Under the pieces are notes generated by a model, which saw nothing but the letters and a program-made list of their open reading frames with translations, had not been told where the DNA came from and did no database searches. This document shows, one piece after another, positions 2,254 through 43,186 of a DNA stretch of 64,000 nt. The translations under genes were made by a program, and so were the position numbers. Origin of the DNA: Guillardia theta CCMP2712 (Eukaryota > Protista > Cryptophyta). The DNA is taken from contig NW_005434583.1 in assembly GCF_000315625.1 (NCBI RefSeq), positions 258,776 to 322,775 on the forward strand. Reading direction: 5' to 3'. Numbering within the stretch: position 1 is the first letter of the stretch; the number at the start of each line of letters is the position of its first letter.

Positions 2254-4773
2254 ATGCTCGCTGAGACACCTATTGTCAATCCCAAGCGATTTAGAGCAGT
2301 TTTGCTATCATCAGCTTGTATTTTGGCGCTTTCTTGGCCGAATGCTTGTAAGGCGGCTCAAATCAATGTAATTCCGGATGGTTTCCCGATCCCCAGTCCA
2401 TCAAAAGTTCAGCCGACCTTCTATGAGACGAAGGAGCAAACCTTTGACAGCAAACAAAGAGATACATTTGACGACGATCCTCTGTTTGGTTCCCATGTTT
2501 CGAGCATGGAATCCAAACCACCATCCCAAGACACAGATGATCAGATGGTATAATGCAGAGTCAAGTTGTTTGTTCGTTGATTGGGCTGACCCTTCTGAAG
2601 GCGAGCTTGATGAAGAAACAGTTACACATGGCAAGGAACCAGCTACAAAGAGAGATGAACATGGTCAGAAAGTGACAGTCAGTGATCCTGGATGTTGATT
2701 TTCTTTCTAGATGCAAAACAATGAGCAATCAGCTCCAGCCGCCTGGAACCACCAGATGGGCTATCCGTACTACCCATACAACAACCCATATTTCTGTCAA
2801 CCGACGAATGGGCAATGTGATCTCGCTGGACTCGAATGTCTGTTGCTGAATTCTATTAACAGACATGATGCATCCGAACCAGTTCCAGTACCCGCCATTC
2901 GCTCCTCCTCCCGCTCTGTCTCTGCGGGAAGCTCTTATGAACTCCAAAAGTTCTCACGGGCAGCCTCCAGGTAACTTCCCACTCCATGCTGTGCTCTTTG
3001 CAAGACTTGACACGCTTGTGTGCTGAAGACGATCGAGGTTATATGAACATGGGAGGCAACTATATGAGAGGTGCAGCGATGCTCAAGGCAGCGACCAGCA
3101 TGGGTCAACAGAACCTCTTGGATGAAGGCTATTACGTCGAATCCGATCCCTCCGAAGATGTGGAAGCAAGATTCCGTGCACTGGCTTCTAGAGGCCGAAC
3201 AAGTTCAGGTCGACGTGCTAGACAATCTGGGTATGCAAATAGAAATCGCTTTTTCGACGCTTCAGATATGGATGAGGTTGAGGATGCCCATTGCAACCCG
3301 CCTGTGCCTCACAATCTTCGCAGTTCCATGATGTATCTCTCTCCCCGCAATTCTCGTCACGAGGATCTCGAGGAAGGAAGCCGCGAGGTCAGAACTGACT
3401 GACTTGGTGGCAATGTTGACTCTTCTGCTGTAGGCTCCTCATCCAGAGCTCTCACGTTTGGGCGTACTTCAGGGAGAAAACCCCAGGAGCCCATGTTGAG
3501 AGACGTGACTTCGGAAGACTTAGCCACGTCTGGTGGCAACGATCCGATCCAGATCCTGCGTGAACTGAACAGCAAGAAGTCGCCGAAGGATTTTGATAAG
3601 TTGATCCTCGAGCACTTCTCCAAGAAAGAGAGCACACCAGAGGAGTCGAACGAGGACTCTTGGCTCAACGAGCTCCATGAATCACTTGACAAGATCGGGG
3701 ATGAACCTGAGAAAGATTCAGCGCTGGTCAAGGAAAAAGGAGCGCAGGGGGGTGCACGAAAGAGCAAGGGGATCAAGCCGGAGGAGCAAGTGGCTGACTT
3801 GAAACCGCAAACGTCGAGGGGAAGGAAAGCAACCAAGCAGCTACAGACGGAAAAGTCGACAAGCAGAAGCTCGAGCGCGCCTCGCGCGGCTTCGGCTCCT
3901 TCCCTCCGGCCTCCCTCCGGCGGAAAGAAGCCTGCCGCTCGAGGAAAGCTCGCCATGCCAGCTGCGACGCCAAGGGGAAGAAAGACAGCTGCTGTCTCGG
4001 AGGCACCAAGCAGCTCCGAGGAAGGAGGCAGCACCAGCTTGAGCCGACCAGCACCACGGAGAGGGCGGGCAGCAGGGGCACGAGGAAGAGCAGGAGCGAG
4101 CGCCAGGGGGAGGAAAGCGACGAGCGTGAGAGGGAGGGTGGCGAAGGCAGGGCAAGGGGGGAGGACGGCGAAGGCAACGAGCACAAGGGGGGCGAGGACG
4201 ACGAGGAGTACAGGAGGGGCGAGGAACAAGGGCGGCGCGAGAGGTAGACCTGGCGTTGCACAGGCAGGATCGATTCAGACAAAAAAAGGTTCGGCGACTG
4301 AGACAAGCGGAGAGCTCACCTCAGATTCGATGCCTCGCACAAGAGCCGCACAAAGCAGATCAAGCAGAAGCTCGAGCGCGCCTCGCGCGGCTTCGGCTCC
4401 TTCCCTCCGGCCTCCCTCCGGCGGAAAGAAGCCTGCCGCTCGAGGAAAGCTCGCCATGCCAGCTGCGACGCCAAGGGAAAGAAAGACAGCTGCTGTCTCG
4501 GAGGCACCAAGCAGCTCCGAGGAAGGAGGCAGCACCAGCTTGAGCCGACCAGCACCACGGAGAGGGCGGGCAGCAGGGGCACGAGGAAGAGCAGGAGCGA
4601 GCGCCAGGGGGAGGAAAGCGACGAGCGTGAGAGGGAGGGTGGCGAAGGCAGGGCAAGGGGGGAGGACGGCGAAGGCAACGAGCACAAGGGGGGCGAGGAC
4701 GACGAGGAGTACAGGAGGGGCGAGGACGACGAGGAGCTCAAGTGTGAAGGCGGAGGGTGAGGAACTCAGTTAG
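2254..4773 (+). CDS. Hypothetical multi-exon protein with a hydrophobic leader and a duplicated Arg/Gly/Ser/Ala-rich basic C-terminus
   Basis: Consecutive ORFs 2227-2553, 2711-2974, 2986-3402 and 3493-4773 separated by intron-sized GT..AG gaps. Leader AVLLSSACILALSWPNACKA. Confidence 0.55.
3861..4726 (+). repeat. In-frame direct repeat of ~365 bp (3861-~4225 and 4362-~4726, offset 501 nt)
   Basis: Near-identical copies encoding SRSSSAPRAAS...TRSTGGAR. Confidence 0.95.
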
Positions 4774-37205: not shown

Positions 37206-38310
37206 TTATGGGCCGAAGTAAGCCTCAGGGAAGCCGGGGATGGGCTTGAAGTTTCCGAGCTGCTCAAAAACTCCCTGCTTGGTGATGAAGTACTGGTGGG
37301 CAAATCTGATGAAAGAAATCAGATAAAAAAAAACCCTAGCTCTTATCTCACCCTCCGAATGCAATCATAGCAAGGCGTCCGTGCTTGATCTCAGCGAGCT
37401 GGTACTTCTCCAAGTTGGCCTCGTTCTTGCCCTGTTGCACATCAGCCACGAGAGAACTTGTTTCAGGATGAAGCTCACCGCGGAAAGGCCGAGAGGATCA
37501 AAGGAGAAGTCACCAGGGTAGCGAGTTCCCTGGATGGTCTGGAAGAGAGCGATTCCGCCGAAGATCTCGAGGAAGGAGGTCCACAAGAGGATCTGAGACA
37601 TGCCACCGGACTTGACGAGAAGGTCGTGGGCCTCGATGGGGGAAACCTGCAAGATGTGAGCTCATCTCGCGCGCTGTGCCAGTGAAGCAGACCTTGTCAA
37701 AGAAGGGGAAGGTGTAGGACTCCTGGACGAGCCATCCGAGAACGGCAAGCATGGCAATGCGACCGTGCTTGAGCTCAGCCTCTCTCAACACCTTGACATC
37801 GAACACTTCGGAGAAGCCAAGGGGATCAAATCCAACATCTCCGGGGAGGGATCCGTCAAGGTTGGTCGGCTGCTTCAAGAAAGGAACGGACTCAGAGAAA
37901 GATCCCTCGAAGACAGCCATGCGAGGTCCACGCGAGATAGCTGAAGACGATAAAGTCAGATTCACGTCACAAAAATAGGATCGTGTTTTCACAGACAAAG
38001 ATATCTTCACAGATGAACTGAAAACAATGATATCACACTGGAACATCTTCGAATTGACATTTCATTCGCACAAGTAGATGTCCTTGGTAGAATTCCTGCC
38101 TCTCACCCCCATGAACGTCCCCCCATGCCCACCACATCCTCCTGTGGTGGTTTCCACAAAATTCTCCAGACACAATTCTTTGAGAGCAGGTTTTCTCAAT
38201 CATTTCTCACCAGCACGAGACGCGGCGGGGGCGGAGAGCCTTCCCGCAGGCGCGGGGGCGAACGCAGCAGCGCTGGCGGCAGCGGCGAGGAGGCTGATCG
38301 CTCTGAGCAT
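37206..38310 (-). CDS. Light-harvesting chlorophyll a/c-binding (LHC) protein, plastid-targeted
   Basis: [19 protein letters not shown] leader, [35 protein letters not shown] and EIKHGRLAM. Confidence 0.96.
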
Positions 38311-38339
38311 GACCTGACGCGATTCGCCGCTCCCCTCCT

Positions 38340-38850
38340 TCTTATAACCCTCGCTACCACCCCCTCGTTCCCCTACCCCTTCTTGATCCTGACCCCCTAC
38401 CCGCCGTGTTGACTGGATACTACCCCCTCAAATCCCATCCAACCTCCCGAGAAATATAAAACCACTACCACCCACCTCGCTACAAAGCCATCTCACTCCC
38501 ACTACCCCTTCTTGAAGAAAAATCCAAGTACCCACCCCATTTCAGAACCCCTCTACCCCCCAATGCATCACAAGAGTGTTATCAAATGACAGGTAGTGCT
38601 TCTCGGGACCCCCCCCTTCTCTAGCTCCACCTGTGGTTTTCCCTTCTTAACTACCCCTCCTTCACGGTACCGACCCTCGGGACCCTCAGGACTTTAAAAA
38701 AAATACCCCACTGATTAAAGACACGAGGGTCGGGACCCCATGGGTCTTTGCTCATCCTACCTCATACACCCGTACTTTGATAATTGTAAAAGGGGGTAGT
38801 CATAGTGAATCTTCCTTGACCACCCAACACAATACTACCCACCCTCAGAA
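38340..38850 (-). other. G-skewed (minus strand) GGGGTA/GGGTGG tract upstream of the LHC gene
   Basis: Many tacccc/cacccc words on the plus strand. Confidence 0.55.
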
Positions 38851-39139
38851 CTTGATTCCTTTCTCACAAAATATTTTAGATTTGAAGAATAGATTTAGCA
38901 GGAAATAATCATACAAATATATATCTTTGTTTTATTAACTACCAGAAAACTTTATGTCACTCTATTAAATCGAATCAATATTTTCCAAAAGTATTGAGAC
39001 TCTTTTAATTAGTTTTTATTTCTATGGTTGAGGTCAATAAGTATTGTAAGTCTCTGACGATTATAAAAACCCGTCATACCTCTAAACATGCAACCCATTT
39101 ACAGTTACATTCCTCTGCTACGGTTACATCTCAGGCCTT

Positions 39140-39285
39140 GGTGATCTGGCCGCGCGCGGCGCCCGGTTCGCGGCCGCGAGTCTGGCCGGGCTCAAAGACC
39201 GGTCACCGGGGTTGTCGAGTGGTTTACCGGCCCATGCTGGAGCGGTTGCGGCACTGTGACTCTGGGCTGCGAGTGACTGACGTTG
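39140..39285. repeat. Intergenic GC-rich palindromic-word island 4
   Basis: ggccgcgcgcggcgcccgg, accggtcaccgg, gtgactc and gagtgactgac. Confidence 0.55.
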
Positions 39286-39337: not shown

Positions 39338-41789
39338 TTATTGAGTCCAGGGGAAGCTGTCTCCCATGGGATCATCCATCACAAGACGCCTACCTTCTCC
39401 TGTGATCAACCTCCCCTCAGTGTCAAACAGGGCGAGTTTAGGAATCCCCTCCACCCCGATCGCCGACGAAAGCGTGCTTCTGGCATTGCCATCTTGGAAA
39501 TCCACAGCGAACCAAGGCATCTGACCAAAATAAGAATCGAAGGCCTCTTGGCTACGGTCAGCTGATACGAAGACGATTTCGAAAGGTTTTCCGTCGGCTA
39601 TCTTGAGTTTGCTGTACATCTGGATCAGCTGAGGGGTGAAGGCCTTGCATGGCTGACACCAACTGGCACTGAAGTAGATCCCAACGTACTTATCCTTCAG
39701 GTTAGACGCATCAAAAGTGGTGTTTCCCGGCCCAACAAGTCGAGCGTCCTTCAGGATCTCGTGCAAGGTCATGCCCTGTTCAGTTTCTCCTGATTGGAGC
39801 TTGGGAGCTCCACCTCCAGCCGTAATGTTCTGATTCGCCGTCGCATGACTGATGGTAATGGTATTGATTGCAGCTTGCAGGATCCTGATCTGCTGTAGCC
39901 ACACTACCAATGAATCTTCATCGCCCGCCTTGGCAGCTGAGTCCACGTAGGAATGCATGAACCTTGAATAGAGCTGTACATGAGGCACGGGACCCAGGCT
40001 GGACTCTTCCTCTCCAGGAATTTTCGCCATGGCTTCCTCCTTGGAAATGATGCTTCCTTCAGCCGCAAGGTCAATAAAGATTGGTTCGGTTTGAGCAGTC
40101 TCTCCCTCTGCCACTGGAGTATCGTATCTCACGAGGAAGTCCACTGGACCTCGCATGCGCGAAGTGCAGTTCATCACCCGAAGAGGGTAACCAAGCTCCC
40201 TAGCAACAGCCATGTAGAGGAAACTCAACGCCATTGGAGAACCTTCCTTCGAAGCGAGCACGTGATTGATGAAATCGTGTAGCTCGACACCGTTGGGATC
40301 AATAACACCAGGAATAGTCTTGTACTGTTTGAAGAAATACGCACTCAAAGTCTTCAGCACAACATCAGGAGATTCGTTTCCATTCAAGGTTGCCTGAACA
40401 GTGTCCTTGATCTGGTTGACTGTTACAGGCACAGTCTTCATCTCTTCAGGCTCAATTTTCTCAGAGATCGTAGCAATCACAAGACCGCCCATTTCCACGC
40501 CTTCGTGCTGTATAACAGTTTTGTTTCCGCCATCTTGCAAGATTGCAACCCACTCTTCCAATTTCAGTCTTTCAGCCTCCTCTCTCACAATTGTGTCTCT
40601 AGATATGTTCAGAAACTTTCCTCCAAGGGTGTGCAAAACCTGAAGATGATTTAAATGGCGAATCGCAAATTCGCAACAGCAGACCTGATGCCAGAATACT
40701 TTGTGAAATTTGGCGTAAGACAATCCTTTGTAGTCCCGAGTTTGCAAGACAAGATCTAGAGAAGATCGCAATGGGCACCAACATCCGCTCTGGATCTCGG
40801 CTTCAAGCTTTCAACCAAGTTAGACCGATTTCAGGCAACATGAATGCCTACCTGCCCAGGAGCCCAAGCAACATACTTGAAGAAGAATCGGAAGTCTTTG
40901 GCCTCCGCTTTTCCCTCACTGACGAGTTGCATAGCATGCTCTGAACCACCATAATAGATTCCGTCAGAAACCTCGGTTGCGTTTCTGAGTCCAGGGACTC
41001 CATGGATCCTGCCAAACCAGTGAATCCACTTAGATCTCAAAACGATGACACTGACATGTAAACTCCCTCTCCAATATCGCCACCAAGATACAATGGATTC
41101 TGCTCAAACATCGGCAACTTCTTTGTGACGTCCCCGACGTTATATTGAGTGGGTCTGTTGATGATGAAGCCCGAACTTCCACTTGCTCCATGGCGAACAA
41201 GCAGAACAACCGATTGATCGAGAACCTAGCACAACGTTCATCTTGCAACCAACGGTTTATACATTTGACGGTACCAATCTAGAGCCGGCAAATCTGAAAG
41301 TCTCAGGTGAAGAAACCAGAAGGCAACCGGGTTGTACTTCGTCAATCTCAACAGCCCAGGTGCCGTTCCTCACGTCGTATCCGGCCAAAGCGCCCTTAGT
41401 GTCCTTCCTAACCCTTGAATATTCAGGAGGCACATGCTCATGCAGACAGGTAAGCACACCTTTGCTTCAGGTTGAGCCTCGGTCCGCCCCTGTTCAACCT
41501 GACGTTGGAGAGTACCTGCGTGTTACGGTTTCACCAACCCCGGCAGCTTAGGAGAAATTTCGACCTTGAAGATCTTCTCTCTGAATGGAGCATTTGTTTT
41601 GAGAAGGACAGCAAACCCTCCGGCCGCAACACTCAAAGGAATCAGGGGAACACCGCCACCTCGAAGGTTCAATGTAGTGGGCACCCCTTTCCTTCCATGC
41701 CGAGCAGGTTGCTGCGCCTGGAGTGGAGTGTTGCGAGCGGAGACAGCTGAAAGAAGAGCAGCGAGCAGAAAGCATCTGATAGAGATCAT
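39338..41789 (-). CDS. Signal peptide + DUF179 (AlgH/YqgE) + SirB1/transglutaminase-like core + nucleoredoxin-type thioredoxin fusion protein
   Basis: DUF179: PGCLLVS, DQSVVLLVRHG..SSGFIINRP, PLYLGGD, FRFFFKYVAWAPGQLEAEI. SirB1-like: FINHVLASKEGSPMALSFLYMAVARELG..DFLVR..IFID. Thioredoxin: GIYFSASWCQPC..FEIVFVSAD..GIPKL..FPW. Confidence 0.82.
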
Positions 41790-42359
41790 ATTCGTATGTA
41801 GCTGCCAAATTGACAGCGGTGGGAGATCTGTGATCCTTTCCTTAGCTTCGGGATAACACCAGTGGGTACCGGTACAGGATCCTGTGGACAAGCCCAGAGC
41901 TGAAAGCGAAGATGAGCTGGTGAAAGGAGGGGGAAGTGAACGCGAAGGTGGTGGATTAGGATAGGAAGGAGGCTGGTGAGGGAGGAGAGAGTCGGCGCTG
42001 CTACCAACGAGGAGGAGAAGCGACGACGAGGAGGCCGCGTCCCAGCATTAGCGCGGAGAGGACTAGAGGGGTTGCACAAAAACCAGACTGAGCTCATGCA
42101 GGGAACTCAAATGTCAATATTTCATCTATATTGAAAAAATACCATATTGATATTTCAAGTTTCTCCGAAAATTATTATTGAAATTCTAATCAAAAAGCAT
42201 AAGACGCCCCAGACGGGAATAATTGTGGTCCACTGAATCCCCTCTAAATGGGGTGGTGGGTCCGGGAGGTGTAAAGAAGGGGTGGGTGAAATACCCCTGA
42301 TGGGTTGGCTGAACCGGATCCCATGGCATAGAGGGGGGTGGGGTCATACCGTTGTAAGG

Positions 42360-42540
42360 CGGCTTCAAGGGCCCGGCCGGGCGGCCCCCGGGGGCCTACC
42401 GGCGGCGGGGCCGCACACTGGCACTGGCACTGACCTCCCGAGTCCCAGTGAGTAAAGGCCCAGTGACTCAGGTGCCGGTCAGTGCGACGCCGCGGCCCCG
42501 GCCCGCCTGGCCCGGCCCGCACGGACGTGATCGCCGCTCC
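42360..42540. repeat. Intergenic GC-rich palindromic-word island 5
   Basis: gggcccggccggg, cactggcactggcactg and cagtgactcag. Confidence 0.6.
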
Positions 42541-42576
42541 TATGCTGAATTGATTCATCAAGCGCTCATTCTTTAA

Positions 42577-42720
42577 CCTTGACCTGCTCCTTGACCTGCT
42601 CCTTGACCTCCTCCTTGATCTCCTTCTTGACGTCCTCCTTGACGTCCTCCTTGATCTCCTTCTTGACCTCCTTCTTGACGTCCTCCTTGACCTCCTCCTT
42701 GACGTCCTCCTTGACCTCCT
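42577..42720 (+). repeat. Degenerate 12-bp minisatellite (TTGACCTCCTCC)
   Basis: About 12 tandem units visible. Confidence 0.9.
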
Positions 42721-43186
42721 TCTCCCACTCACCCACTCACCCACTCTATCCATTCTTCATCCTGCATGATTCTCATTCCCCATGCGTTTCTCTTCGTCAA
42801 TCCGCCTCCACGCGCCATGTACTGAGTTTCCCAACATTTTCACTCTTTTGTTCCTTCTCCCATCCTCCTTTTCCTCTTCTTCCTCCTCCCCCCCCCCCAC
42901 ACCCGCCTCCTATCCCCACATTATACCTTCCTCGACTGCTTCTCTTCATCCTCTCTCCCTTTCATGCCTGCCCTGCCTTCGTGTCCCCCCCCTGAGCCTT
43001 CTTGCTGCAATGTTTCAGGTTCAGTCGCTGGTCGCACTTGTGAGAGTTGCTTGTTAACATTTGACACTTTTCAAGCCTCCCTTGGTTCTAGATACCAATC
43101 CTGATCTTCTACATACTACTTGCTCATTTTCTACATACTAATCATCATCTTCTTGACTACGGTACCAACTTACATGTAGCAGAAAC

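What the first reader, a model, noticed from the sequence alone, without database searches (positions are those of the whole stretch)
39338..41789. Unusual three-domain fusion: DUF179(AlgH/YqgE) + SirB1/transglutaminase-like + nucleoredoxin (WCQPC) behind a signal peptide
Seen: motifs of all three domains in one spliced frame. The SirB1-like and thioredoxin parts share a single long exon, so that junction is not a splicing guess. Established: DUF179 and SirB1-like domains are mostly of unknown function, and WCxPC nucleoredoxin/tryparedoxin domains are dithiol reductases. I do not know this architecture from elsewhere. Inference: a Rosetta-stone link tying two uncharacterised families to thiol redox control in the ER or periplastidial compartment.
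Basis: partly seen in the sequence, partly recalled or inferred. Interest (0 to 1): 0.72.

Follow-up and report, generated by a model that had tools for sequence, protein, structure and literature searches.

The report
Cryptophyte DUF179–SirB1–tryparedoxin fusion protein
This is a real gene of a cryptophyte alga that joins two poorly understood protein families (DUF179/YqgE and SirB1) to a thiol reductase domain; it is rare but conserved, so it hints that the three work together.

Summary
A minus-strand gene (ATG 41789, TAA 39338-39340) encodes about 722 aa. In order it has a signal peptide, a basic stretch ending in LNLRGGG, a short hydrophobic segment, DUF179 (AlgH/YqgE), a SirB1-type transglutaminase-like domain without a catalytic triad, and a tryparedoxin/nucleoredoxin-type thioredoxin domain with WCQPC. 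Pfam supports all three domains above its cut-offs. The end of DUF179, the SirB1-like domain and the thioredoxin domain lie in one open frame. That frame probably holds a further 45-nt in-frame, stop-free intron.

The architecture is not unique. Full-length three-domain orthologues exist in other cryptophytes, including transcripts of Chroomonas sp. CCMP1168. DUF179+SirB1 proteins without thioredoxin occur as a second gene in this genome, in Bigelowiella natans and in unnamed marine eukaryotes. Plant DUF179-2 (AT3G19780) already joins a signal peptide, PDI-like domains and DUF179, and gshB adjoins DUF179 genes in bacteria. The DUF179-to-thiol link is therefore not new. The DUF179-SirB1 link seems undescribed.

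A CWC motif in DUF179 occurs only in the thioredoxin-bearing forms. Function and compartment remain inferred. I read it as a new variant of known kinds, of moderate interest. An earlier scan note names the genome Guillardia theta. The scan had not noted this fusion elsewhere.

The parts
39338..41789 (-). Whole coding region: six exons, about 722 codons plus stop.
   Evidence: All five introns are GT..AG and 44-98 nt long. The exon junctions reproduce the orthologue sequences.
41535..41789 (-). Exon 1. Signal peptide aa 1-18 (41736-41789), then a basic, acid-free stretch ending LNLRGGG (LRGGG at 41652-41666), then a second hydrophobic segment VPLIPLSVAAGGFAVLL (41601-41651).
   Evidence: Hydropathy. 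The motif L-x-LRGGG-(I/V)PPP-x-IPL plus an Ala/Gly-rich segment is conserved in all full-length orthologues. The exon 1/2 junction is the least certain one.
41275..41436 (-). Exon 2: pre-DUF179 region (GYDVRNGTWAVEIDEVQPGCLLVSSPETFRFAGSRL), which includes the first DUF179 strand.
   Evidence: Aligns to the orthologues. It has no Pfam hit on its own.
41056..41225 (-). Exon 3: N-terminal half of DUF179.
   Evidence: PF02622 profile 9-64, E 4.2e-10, 40.2 bits.
40852..41008 (-). Exon 4: middle part of DUF179.
   Evidence: PF02622 profile 71-119, E 9e-7, 29.4 bits.
40685..40807 (-). Exon 5: C-terminal end of DUF179 (LEAEIQSG-CWC-PLRSSLDLVL), with the CWC motif at 40775-40783.
   Evidence: Aligns to the QLE.E...W... 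end of DUF179, including E. coli YqgE. CWC is present in 17/17 thioredoxin-bearing orthologues and absent from forms without thioredoxin.
40640..40684 (-). Probable 45-nt in-frame intron (GT..AG) without a stop codon.
   Evidence: Its 15 residues (VCCCEFAIRHLNHLQ) fall in a gap in all orthologues. Its size matches the other introns of the gene.
39338..40639 (-). Exon 6: helical linker, SirB1-like domain, tryparedoxin-like domain and the stop codon.
   Evidence: Continuous ORF, Pfam, PDB sequence search.
40010..40420 (-). Core of the SirB1-type transglutaminase-like domain (Transglut_core2). The triad positions read GSPMALS / PVDFLVR / FIDLAAEG, so there is no Cys nucleophile and no His.
   Evidence: PF13369 48.6 bits. 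Alignment with E. coli YchA. AF2 model pTM 0.78. Nearest ESM Atlas clusters are 100% PF13369, TM 0.65. PDB menin Z 12.3, followed by transglutaminase-fold proteins.
39410..39694 (-). Tryparedoxin/nucleoredoxin-type thioredoxin domain, with WCQPC at 39647-39661, the cis-Pro loop GIPKL at 39434-39448 and a C-terminal FPW.
   Evidence: PF13905 E 2.3e-27. Tryparedoxin I 1o7u E 8e-29. Foldseek places the orthologue model on tryparedoxins at TMt 0.75.

Best explanation
This is one genuine six-exon nuclear gene of a cryptophyte alga. The protein carries a cleavable signal peptide, a basic transit-peptide-like stretch ending in a conserved LxLRGGG motif, and a short Ala/Gly-rich hydrophobic segment. 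It therefore enters the ER-derived route. It probably goes on to the periplastidial compartment or plastid, or is tethered to one of those membranes.

The mature part is an older algal two-domain module: a DUF179 (AlgH/YqgE) domain followed by a SirB1-type transglutaminase-like/helical scaffold with no catalytic residues. In cryptophytes one paralogue of this module gained a C-terminal tryparedoxin/nucleoredoxin-type domain with an intact WCxPC dithiol site.

Shown here: the gene structure, the domain identities, the loss of the transglutaminase triad, the intact CxxC and cis-Pro, conservation on single transcripts in relatives, and the presence of a paralogue without thioredoxin.

Inferred: the thioredoxin domain is the only catalytic part and carries out dithiol-disulfide exchange. 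The DUF179-SirB1 module is the client-binding or regulatory part that aims or gates it. A CWC pair that appeared in the DUF179 domain only in the thioredoxin-bearing forms is the most likely internal partner of the WCxPC site, which would make a redox switch. By analogy with E. coli YqgE (Lon-dependent, lowers protein expression), plant DUF179-1 and -3 (ClpC1 interactors) and SirB1 (prfA-prmC operon, predicted uS11 binder), the process controlled is probably organellar protein homeostasis or translation.
For: Gene and domains:
- Gene model. Pfam on each exon. The exon junctions reproduce the orthologues.
- Single-transcript orthologues: Chroomonas sp. CCMP1168 (P0004, 744 aa) and MMETSP transcript P0109 (759 aa).
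- Thioredoxin domain: about 45% identical to tryparedoxin I, E 8e-29, with WCxPC, cis-Pro and FPW aligned. Fold confirmed on the orthologue model.
- DUF179 fold: matches 2ew0, 2aj2 and AlgH 2mui.
- SirB1-like fold: AF2 pTM 0.78; Atlas PF13369 clusters at TM 0.65; menin at Z 12.3. Triad residues are absent, as in E. coli YchA.

Relatives:
- Second DUF179+Transglut_core2 gene at G000:C13, about 257.9-260.2 kb, with VWF in place of CWC and no WCxxC seen downstream.
- Two-domain proteins in Bigelowiella natans and in ENA contigs.
- CWC is confined to the thioredoxin-bearing forms.

Thiol context of DUF179:
- AT3G19780 has ER_PDI_fam domains plus DUF179 and is predicted secreted.
- gshB lies next to the DUF179 gene in E. 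coli and in 5/5 sampled Pseudomonadota.

Proteostasis and translation context:
- PMC11634777, PMC8889267 and bioRxiv 10.64898/2026.08.26.747336.
- A Trypsin+Transglut_core2 fusion cluster in Planctomycetota.
Against: - There are no expression, localisation or activity data for this gene. The exon 1/2 junction and the 45-nt intron are inferred from homology only.
- The CWC-thioredoxin co-occurrence is a single phylogenetic event (one clade), so it is not independent evidence.
- The full-length AF2 model has pTM 0.55 and pLDDT of only 50-70 in the thioredoxin domain.
- The second hydrophobic segment is short (14-17 residues, with two Pro). It may be neither a membrane anchor nor a targeting element.
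- The residue after the predicted signal-peptide cleavage site is Arg here and Leu in the orthologues. That leaves ER lumen, periplastidial compartment and plastid all open.
- The functional analogies come from distant bacterial and plant relatives whose own mechanisms are unknown.
Confidence: 0.55

Rival explanations
1. It is an ER-lumenal PDI-like folding factor, the cryptophyte counterpart of plant DUF179-2 (AT3G19780). On this reading the protein stays in the ER or chloroplast-ER lumen. The thioredoxin domain acts as an oxidase, isomerase or ERdj5-like reductase on secretory or plastid-bound clients, and DUF179-SirB1 is the client-binding part.
For: - Signal peptide.
- The plant DUF179-2 family combines a predicted secretory signal, two ER_PDI_fam regions and a C-terminal DUF179.
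- No aromatic residue follows the predicted cleavage site.
Against: - The thioredoxin domain is of the tryparedoxin/nucleoredoxin type (WCxPC), not PDI type (WCGHC). Its solved relatives are reductases of reducing compartments.
- The domain order is reversed compared with the plant protein.
- The word-index searches seeded with the DUF179 domain returned no plant DUF179-2 relative, so this would be analogy at best.
- No ER-retention signal: the C-terminus is FPWTQ.
- A conserved basic transit-peptide-like stretch follows the signal peptide.
Confidence: 0.2
2. It is a type I membrane protein whose bulk faces the cytosol. The signal peptide is cleaved, the second hydrophobic segment stops transfer, and DUF179-SirB1-thioredoxin sits on the cytosolic face of the ER or outermost plastid membrane. 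There the nucleoredoxin-like domain would be kept reduced by cytosolic systems.
For: - There are two hydrophobic segments.
- Lys and Arg follow the second one (KTNAPFREKIFK).
- Nucleoredoxin and tryparedoxin relatives are cytosolic reductases (established knowledge; hits).
Against: - The segment is short, Ala/Gly/Pro-rich and only moderately hydrophobic in the orthologues.
- Positive charges also precede it.
- No topology predictor was available.
Confidence: 0.15
3. It is a gene-model artefact: two neighbouring genes (a DUF179 gene and a SirB1-thioredoxin gene) read as one.
For: No transcript data from this organism were available here. This genome's own annotated protein did not appear in the searches.
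Against: - The last DUF179 strand, the SirB1-like domain and the thioredoxin domain share one stop-free frame, 40807-39341.
- Transcript-derived proteins of two other cryptophyte cultures carry all three domains in the same order.
- The junction residues match the orthologues exactly.
Confidence: 0.03

Closest known systems
Plant DUF179-2 (Arabidopsis AT3G19780, 1059 aa)
   Same: Predicted secretory signal, thioredoxin-fold domains and a DUF179 domain in one polypeptide (PMC8889267, Table 2 and supplementary Table S2).
   Different: - The thioredoxin-fold parts are PDI-like and lie N-terminal to DUF179.
- There is no SirB1-like domain.
- The word-index searches seeded with the DUF179 domain did not return it.
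- Its function is also unknown.
Algal DUF179+SirB1 two-domain proteins (paralogue B at G000:C13; Bigelowiella natans Bigna1 73803 = P0200; ENA clusters P0161, P0165, P0169)
   Same: The same DUF179-then-Transglut_core2 order. A single origin of all fused DUF179 domains is not rejected (AU p 0.70).
   Different: - They have no thioredoxin domain and no CWC motif (VWF, VWY, YWR or CWR instead).
- Paralogue B keeps more canonical SirB1 motifs (RGNPITIS, SPRHFLV, VDPFNGG).
- P0161 has an AAA|F-type signal/transit junction.
Bacterial YqgE/AlgH (UPF0301; PDB 2ew0, 2aj2, 2mui)
   Same: The same fold and Pfam family.
   Different: - The bacterial proteins are single-domain and cytoplasmic, and lack both PGC and CWC cysteines.
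- E. coli YqgE promotes dormancy in a Lon-dependent way (PMC11634777). Nothing comparable has been tested here.
Bacterial SirB1/YchA (Transglut_core2 + TPR)
   Same: The same Pfam family, and the same loss of the Cys-His-Asp triad. The fold matches PF13369 clusters.
   Different: - The cryptophyte domain is more diverged (23% identity or less).
- It has a long N-terminal helical extension.
- It ends in two long helices with no detectable TPR.
Tryparedoxin / nucleoredoxin (Thioredoxin_8)
   Same: WCxPC, the cis-Pro loop and C-terminal FPW, with 38-45% identity to tryparedoxins. The genome holds several paralogues at 41-47% identity.
   Different: Here it is a C-terminal appendage of a DUF179-SirB1 protein behind a signal peptide. 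Gln replaces the first Pro of WCPPC.

Membership tests
DUF179 / AlgH-YqgE (PF02622) | Pfam profile match above the gathering score | tested here: met
   Exon 3 scores 40.2 bits and exon 4 scores 29.4 bits (cut-off 27), with collinear profile ranges 9-64 and 71-119. Full-length orthologues carry PF02622.
DUF179 / AlgH-YqgE (PF02622) | AlgH-like alpha/beta fold | tested here: met
   The AF2 model of orthologue P0004 has pLDDT of about 90 in this domain. Foldseek gives 2ew0 at TMt 0.79 and 2hrx at 0.74. This was tested on the orthologue, because the exons were not joined.
DUF179 / AlgH-YqgE (PF02622) | C-terminal G-Q-L-E-x-E ... W motif | tested here: met
   WAPGQ|LEAEIQSGCWC spans the exon 4/5 junction and aligns to E. 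coli WEKGQLEQEILDNAWL.
SirB1 / Transglut_core2 (PF13369) | Pfam profile match above the gathering score | tested here: met
   48.6 bits against a cut-off of 23.5, E 7.8e-13, profile 7-129 of 155.
SirB1 / Transglut_core2 (PF13369) | Transglutaminase-like fold close to other family members | tested here: met
   The model of window:39746-40639 has pTM 0.78. The nearest ESM Atlas clusters are all 100% PF13369 (TM 0.65/0.77, 224 residues aligned). The PDB list is headed by menin at Z 12.3, followed by transglutaminase-fold proteins.
SirB1 / Transglut_core2 (PF13369) | C-terminal TPR repeats, as in YchA | tested here: inconclusive
   There is no TPR Pfam hit. The model shows two long helices after the core, at residues 220-274.
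Active transglutaminase / papain-like thiol enzyme | Cys-His-Asp catalytic triad | tested here: not met
   The Cys position is Pro (GSPMALS) and the His position is Asp (PVDFLVR). E. coli YchA also lacks the triad.
Tryparedoxin / nucleoredoxin type thioredoxin (PF13905) | Profile match, WCxPC active site and cis-Pro loop | tested here: met
   95.6 bits. WCQPC and GIPKL align to WCPPC and SIPTL of 1o7u, E 8e-29.
Tryparedoxin / nucleoredoxin type thioredoxin (PF13905) | Disulfide reductase activity | not testable with these tools
   This needs an insulin or DTNB reduction assay.
Plant DUF179-2 (PDI-like + DUF179) | PDI-type thioredoxin-fold domains N-terminal to DUF179 | tested here: not met
   The thioredoxin domain here is C-terminal and tryparedoxin-like. 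The word-index searches seeded with the DUF179 domain recovered no plant DUF179-2 relative.
Cryptophyte periplastidial or plastid-targeted protein (bipartite signal) | Signal peptide followed by a transit-peptide-like region, with aromatic +1 for stromal import | tested here: inconclusive
   A signal peptide and a basic, acid-free stretch are present. The residue at +1 is Arg here and Leu in the orthologues. No predictor or experiment was available. The rule itself comes from my own knowledge of the literature.

The most novel reading that the evidence does not exclude
DUF179 (YqgE/AlgH) and SirB1 (YchA) are two halves of one conserved machine. In bacteria they would be encoded separately and in algae fused. 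The machine would bind ribosomal or other basic client proteins and set their fate (translation shut-down, or hand-over to Lon/Clp-type proteases) under thiol-redox control. If so, the cryptophyte fusion with a tryparedoxin domain and its co-evolved CWC motif would expose the missing chemistry behind the YqgE-dependent persister/dormancy phenotype.
Probability: 0.15. Interest if true: 0.8.

Novelty: new variant of a known kind. Interest (0 to 1): 0.5.

Why it matters
DUF179 and SirB1 are widespread families with no known biochemical function. DUF179 was present in 271 of the 301 Pseudomonadota genomes sampled. E. coli YqgE (DUF179) was recently shown to be a major, Lon-dependent driver of dormancy and antibiotic persistence, by an unknown mechanism. 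Plant DUF179 proteins are ClpC1 interactors.

A conserved fusion of DUF179 with SirB1 gives a concrete and cheap hypothesis to test in E. coli: do YqgE and YchA interact, and is ychA needed for YqgE-induced lag? Three lines point to thiol chemistry: the tryparedoxin fusion here, the PDI fusion in plants, and gshB synteny in bacteria. For cryptophyte biology, the protein is a candidate redox component of the compartments around the complex plastid.

Tried and rejected
Exons were searched one by one by reference. The natural full-length orthologue P0004 served as proxy for full-length folding and searches.
- Word-index searches from the DUF179 domain, as a single sequence and as a 74-sequence profile, found only the cryptophyte family and short DUF179 proteins. 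They did not reach plant DUF179-2, so that link rests on the paper's supplementary table.
- ESM Atlas feature search gave no usable hit.
- Foldseek against PDB with the SirB1-like model gave no match at E of 0.001 or better. VIA-align and the Atlas shape search were needed.
- The first AU test, on 113 rows, was killed for memory or time. A reduced 36-row set was used instead. It does not reject a single origin of the fusion, so I dropped the idea of two independent DUF179-SirB1 fusions as positive evidence.
- Phylogenetic-profile test of DUF179 against SirB1 in bacteria: abandoned, because DUF179 is in 271/301 sampled Pseudomonadota, which makes co-occurrence uninformative.
- The idea that LRGG is a ubiquitin-like cleavage site: noted only. 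Deubiquitinases need the ubiquitin fold, and nothing here tests the idea.
- No supplementary data of PMC11634777 were held, so I could not look up ychA in its CRISPRi screen.
Full report
**What is there**

On the minus strand, the first in-frame ATG at 41789 opens a coding region that ends at TAA 39338-39340. My model has six exons:
- 41789-41535
- 41436-41275
- 41225-41056
- 41008-40852
- 40807-40685
- 40639-39338

The five GT..AG introns are 98, 49, 47, 44 and 45 nt long, and the CDS is 2169 nt, or 722 codons plus stop. Each was searched by reference, and a natural full-length orthologue stood in wherever a whole protein was needed.

**Domains**

Pfam, exon by exon:
- DUF179 in exon 3: profile 9-64, 40.2 bits.
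- DUF179 in exon 4: profile 71-119, 29.4 bits (cut-off 27).
- Transglut_core2 in the long open frame 40807-39341, at residues 130-266: 48.6 bits, cut-off 23.5.
- Thioredoxin_8 at residues 372-466: 95.6 bits.

The start of that same open frame (LEAEIQSGCWCPLRSSLDLVL) is the conserved C-terminal end of DUF179 and aligns to E. coli YqgE QLEQEILDNAWL. So the end of DUF179, the SirB1-like domain and the thioredoxin domain share one stop-free frame.

Residues 42-56 of that frame (VCCCEFAIRHLNHLQ; 40684-40640) are missing from every orthologue. They are bounded by GT..AG and have the size of the gene's other introns, so they are probably a sixth-exon boundary. Because the stretch is in frame and stop-free, it does not affect the fusion.

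**The thioredoxin domain**

It is tryparedoxin/nucleoredoxin-like. Tryparedoxin I (1o7u) matches at E 8e-29 over 128 residues, with WCQPC, the cis-Pro loop (GIPKL) and the C-terminal FPW all aligned. The genome has several paralogues at 41-47% identity.

**The SirB1-like domain**

An AF2 model of window:39746-40639 (pLDDT 76.8, pTM 0.78) has these matches:
- The nearest ESM Atlas neighbours are clusters that are 100% PF13369 (TM 0.65 by query, 224-227 residues).
- The best PDB match is menin (Z 12.3, 214 residues, rmsd 3.7).
- Next come transglutaminases, arylamine N-acetyltransferases, XPC/Rad4, PNGase and LapG, all of the transglutaminase/papain-like fold.
- Foldseek alone gave only weak rows.

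The catalytic positions read Pro, Asp and Asp. E. coli YchA also lacks the triad. The domain is therefore a non-catalytic scaffold.

**The DUF179 fold**

It was confirmed on the orthologue model, with 2ew0 at TMt 0.79.

**The N-terminus**

Residues 1-18 are a typical signal peptide ending in AVSA. Residues 19-46 are basic and free of acidic residues, and end in LNLRGGG. Residues 47-63 form a second, moderately hydrophobic Ala/Gly/Pro-rich segment.

In all full-length orthologues the order is the same, and the motif L-x-LRGGG-(I/V)PPP-x-IPL is nearly invariant. The residue after the predicted cleavage site is Arg here and Leu in the orthologues. From my own knowledge of cryptophyte targeting, an aromatic +1 residue marks stromal import and its absence marks periplastidial proteins. 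On that rule, this looks like a bipartite signal for the periplastidial compartment. ER lumen, plastid and a membrane-anchored topology are not excluded.

**Is the architecture unique? No.**

A word-index search with the long exon found proteins carrying PF02622+PF13369+PF13905 at 41-53% identity (P0001-P0004, P0006). Cluster look-up shows:
- P0004 is a transcript-derived protein of Chroomonas sp. CCMP1168 (744 aa).
- P0109 is another MMETSP transcript (759 aa).
- Other members are 716-797 aa.
- JGI's automatic names already read 'AlgH/UPF0301 family transcriptional regulator/thiol-disulfide ...'.

An exhaustive HMMER search of 1.84 billion representatives, using the DUF179+SirB1 part of P0004, gave 3796 hits. 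The best non-orthologues are eukaryotic single-domain DUF179 proteins of 250-450 aa, for example from Tribonema and Phaeothamnion. Four longer representatives carry DUF179+Transglut_core2 without thioredoxin: P0161, P0169, P0165 and P0200, the last being Bigelowiella natans.

**A second fused gene in this genome**

The window's own genome (87.1 Mb, 669 contigs) matches an earlier scan note that names it Guillardia theta; I checked only the genome size and the cryptophyte orthologues. It has about seven DUF179 loci and four Transglut_core2 loci.

One further locus, G000:C13 at about 257.9-260.2 kb, has collinear DUF179 exons (profile 5-40, 42-99, 104-127) and Transglut_core2 exons (33-59, 58-92, 84-118). 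It shows no WCxxC downstream. Its Hanusia phi orthologue is P0198.

**Origin of the fusion**

On a DUF179-domain tree, the three-domain proteins form one clade (SH-aLRT 100) and the two-domain proteins group elsewhere with weak support. On a reduced 36-row set, the AU test does not reject a single clade of all fused forms (p 0.70).

The simplest history is one old algal DUF179-SirB1 fusion, a duplication in cryptophytes, and the addition of a tryparedoxin-like domain to one copy. This is compatible with the data but not demonstrated.

**A correlated change: the CWC motif**

The two residues flanking the invariant Trp at the end of DUF179 are Cys-Trp-Cys in all 17 thioredoxin-bearing sequences. 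They are V/Y/K/S/A-W-F/Y/R/I/L in every form without thioredoxin, including the paralogue in the same genome (VWF). Only B. natans keeps the first Cys.

The other cysteines conserved in the family are the widespread PGC, an N-C-(T/S) in the SirB1 core, and the WCxPC pair. Because all CWC carriers are one clade, this counts as one event. It is a hypothesis for an internal redox partner, not proof.

The full-length model (pTM 0.55, low confidence in the thioredoxin part) could not show whether the two sites can meet.

**Context from known biology**

- DUF179 and thiols, plants: supplementary Table S2 of PMC8889267 lists AT3G19780 (DUF179-2, 1059 aa, predicted secreted, not a ClpC1 interactor) with ER_PDI_fam regions at 30-163 and 603-823 and DUF179 at 898-1054.
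- DUF179 and thiols, bacteria: in E. coli K-12, yqgE follows gshB. In five of five sampled Pseudomonadota genomes the glutathione synthetase gene lies 0.1-1.2 kb upstream of the DUF179 gene on the same strand. Those five were the top DUF179 scorers and are not known to be independent.
- DUF179 and proteostasis/translation: YqgE drives Lon-dependent dormancy and lowers protein expression, and an in-silico disulfide-isomerase prediction is cited (PMC11634777). Plant DUF179-1 and -3 are ClpC1 interactors.
- SirB1: ychA sits in prfA-prmC-ychQ-ychA. An AF3 proteome scan ranks YchA among three confident partners of ribosomal protein uS11. Its role in Klebsiella is 'undefined'. A Planctomycetota cluster fuses Transglut_core2 to a trypsin-like protease.

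I found no paper that discusses a DUF179-SirB1 or DUF179-SirB1-thioredoxin protein. The library is not complete.

**Verdict**

The protein is a lineage-restricted variant built from known families. Its thioredoxin link to DUF179 repeats something already visible in plants and bacteria. Its most useful content is the conserved DUF179-SirB1 pairing and the CWC/WCxPC co-occurrence. Mechanism and compartment remain inferences.

Noticed in passing
window 41652-41666, and the orthologues P0002, P0003, P0004, P0049, P0109: The LRGGG that follows the signal peptide (the subject of another first-stage note) is part of a nearly invariant motif, L-x-LRGGG-(I/V)PPP-x-IPL, in all cryptophyte orthologues. 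It is therefore under selection and is not a chance ubiquitin-tail look-alike. Its role (maturation site or start of a membrane segment) is unknown.
   Followed up: partly
G000:C13 about 257900-260200 (+) = L012 about 2400-4700: This is a second DUF179+SirB1 gene in the same genome. It has no thioredoxin domain, keeps canonical SirB1 motifs (RGNPITIS, SPRHFLV, VDPFNGG) and has VWF where the window gene has CWC. Its Hanusia phi orthologue is P0198.
   Followed up: partly
window 42577-42720: There is a 12-nt tandem repeat (CCTTGACCTCCT, 12 copies, 88% matches) about 0.8 kb upstream of the ATG. It lies inside a GC-rich, strongly skewed stretch that reads as Arg/Ser-rich or Lys/Glu-rich ORFs on the two strands (42244-42753).
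   Followed up: no
window 38700-39150: There is an AT-rich trough (GC 0.31-0.35) directly downstream of the stop codon. It is probably the 3' UTR and intergenic region. It is preceded by a C-rich stretch with strongly negative GC skew at 38100-38850.
   Followed up: no
G000:C144:148624-149457 and G000:C43:40338-40736: There are further tryparedoxin/nucleoredoxin-like domains in the genome: a tandem pair in one 428-aa frame and one inside an 828-aa open frame. This suggests the family has expanded and been recruited into several fusions.
   Followed up: no
P0161 and P0169 (ENA marine contigs): These two-domain DUF179+SirB1 proteins from unnamed eukaryotes start with signal peptides followed by Phe (AAA|FRAP, ASV|F). 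That is the pattern of plastid-targeted proteins in algae with red-type complex plastids.
   Followed up: no
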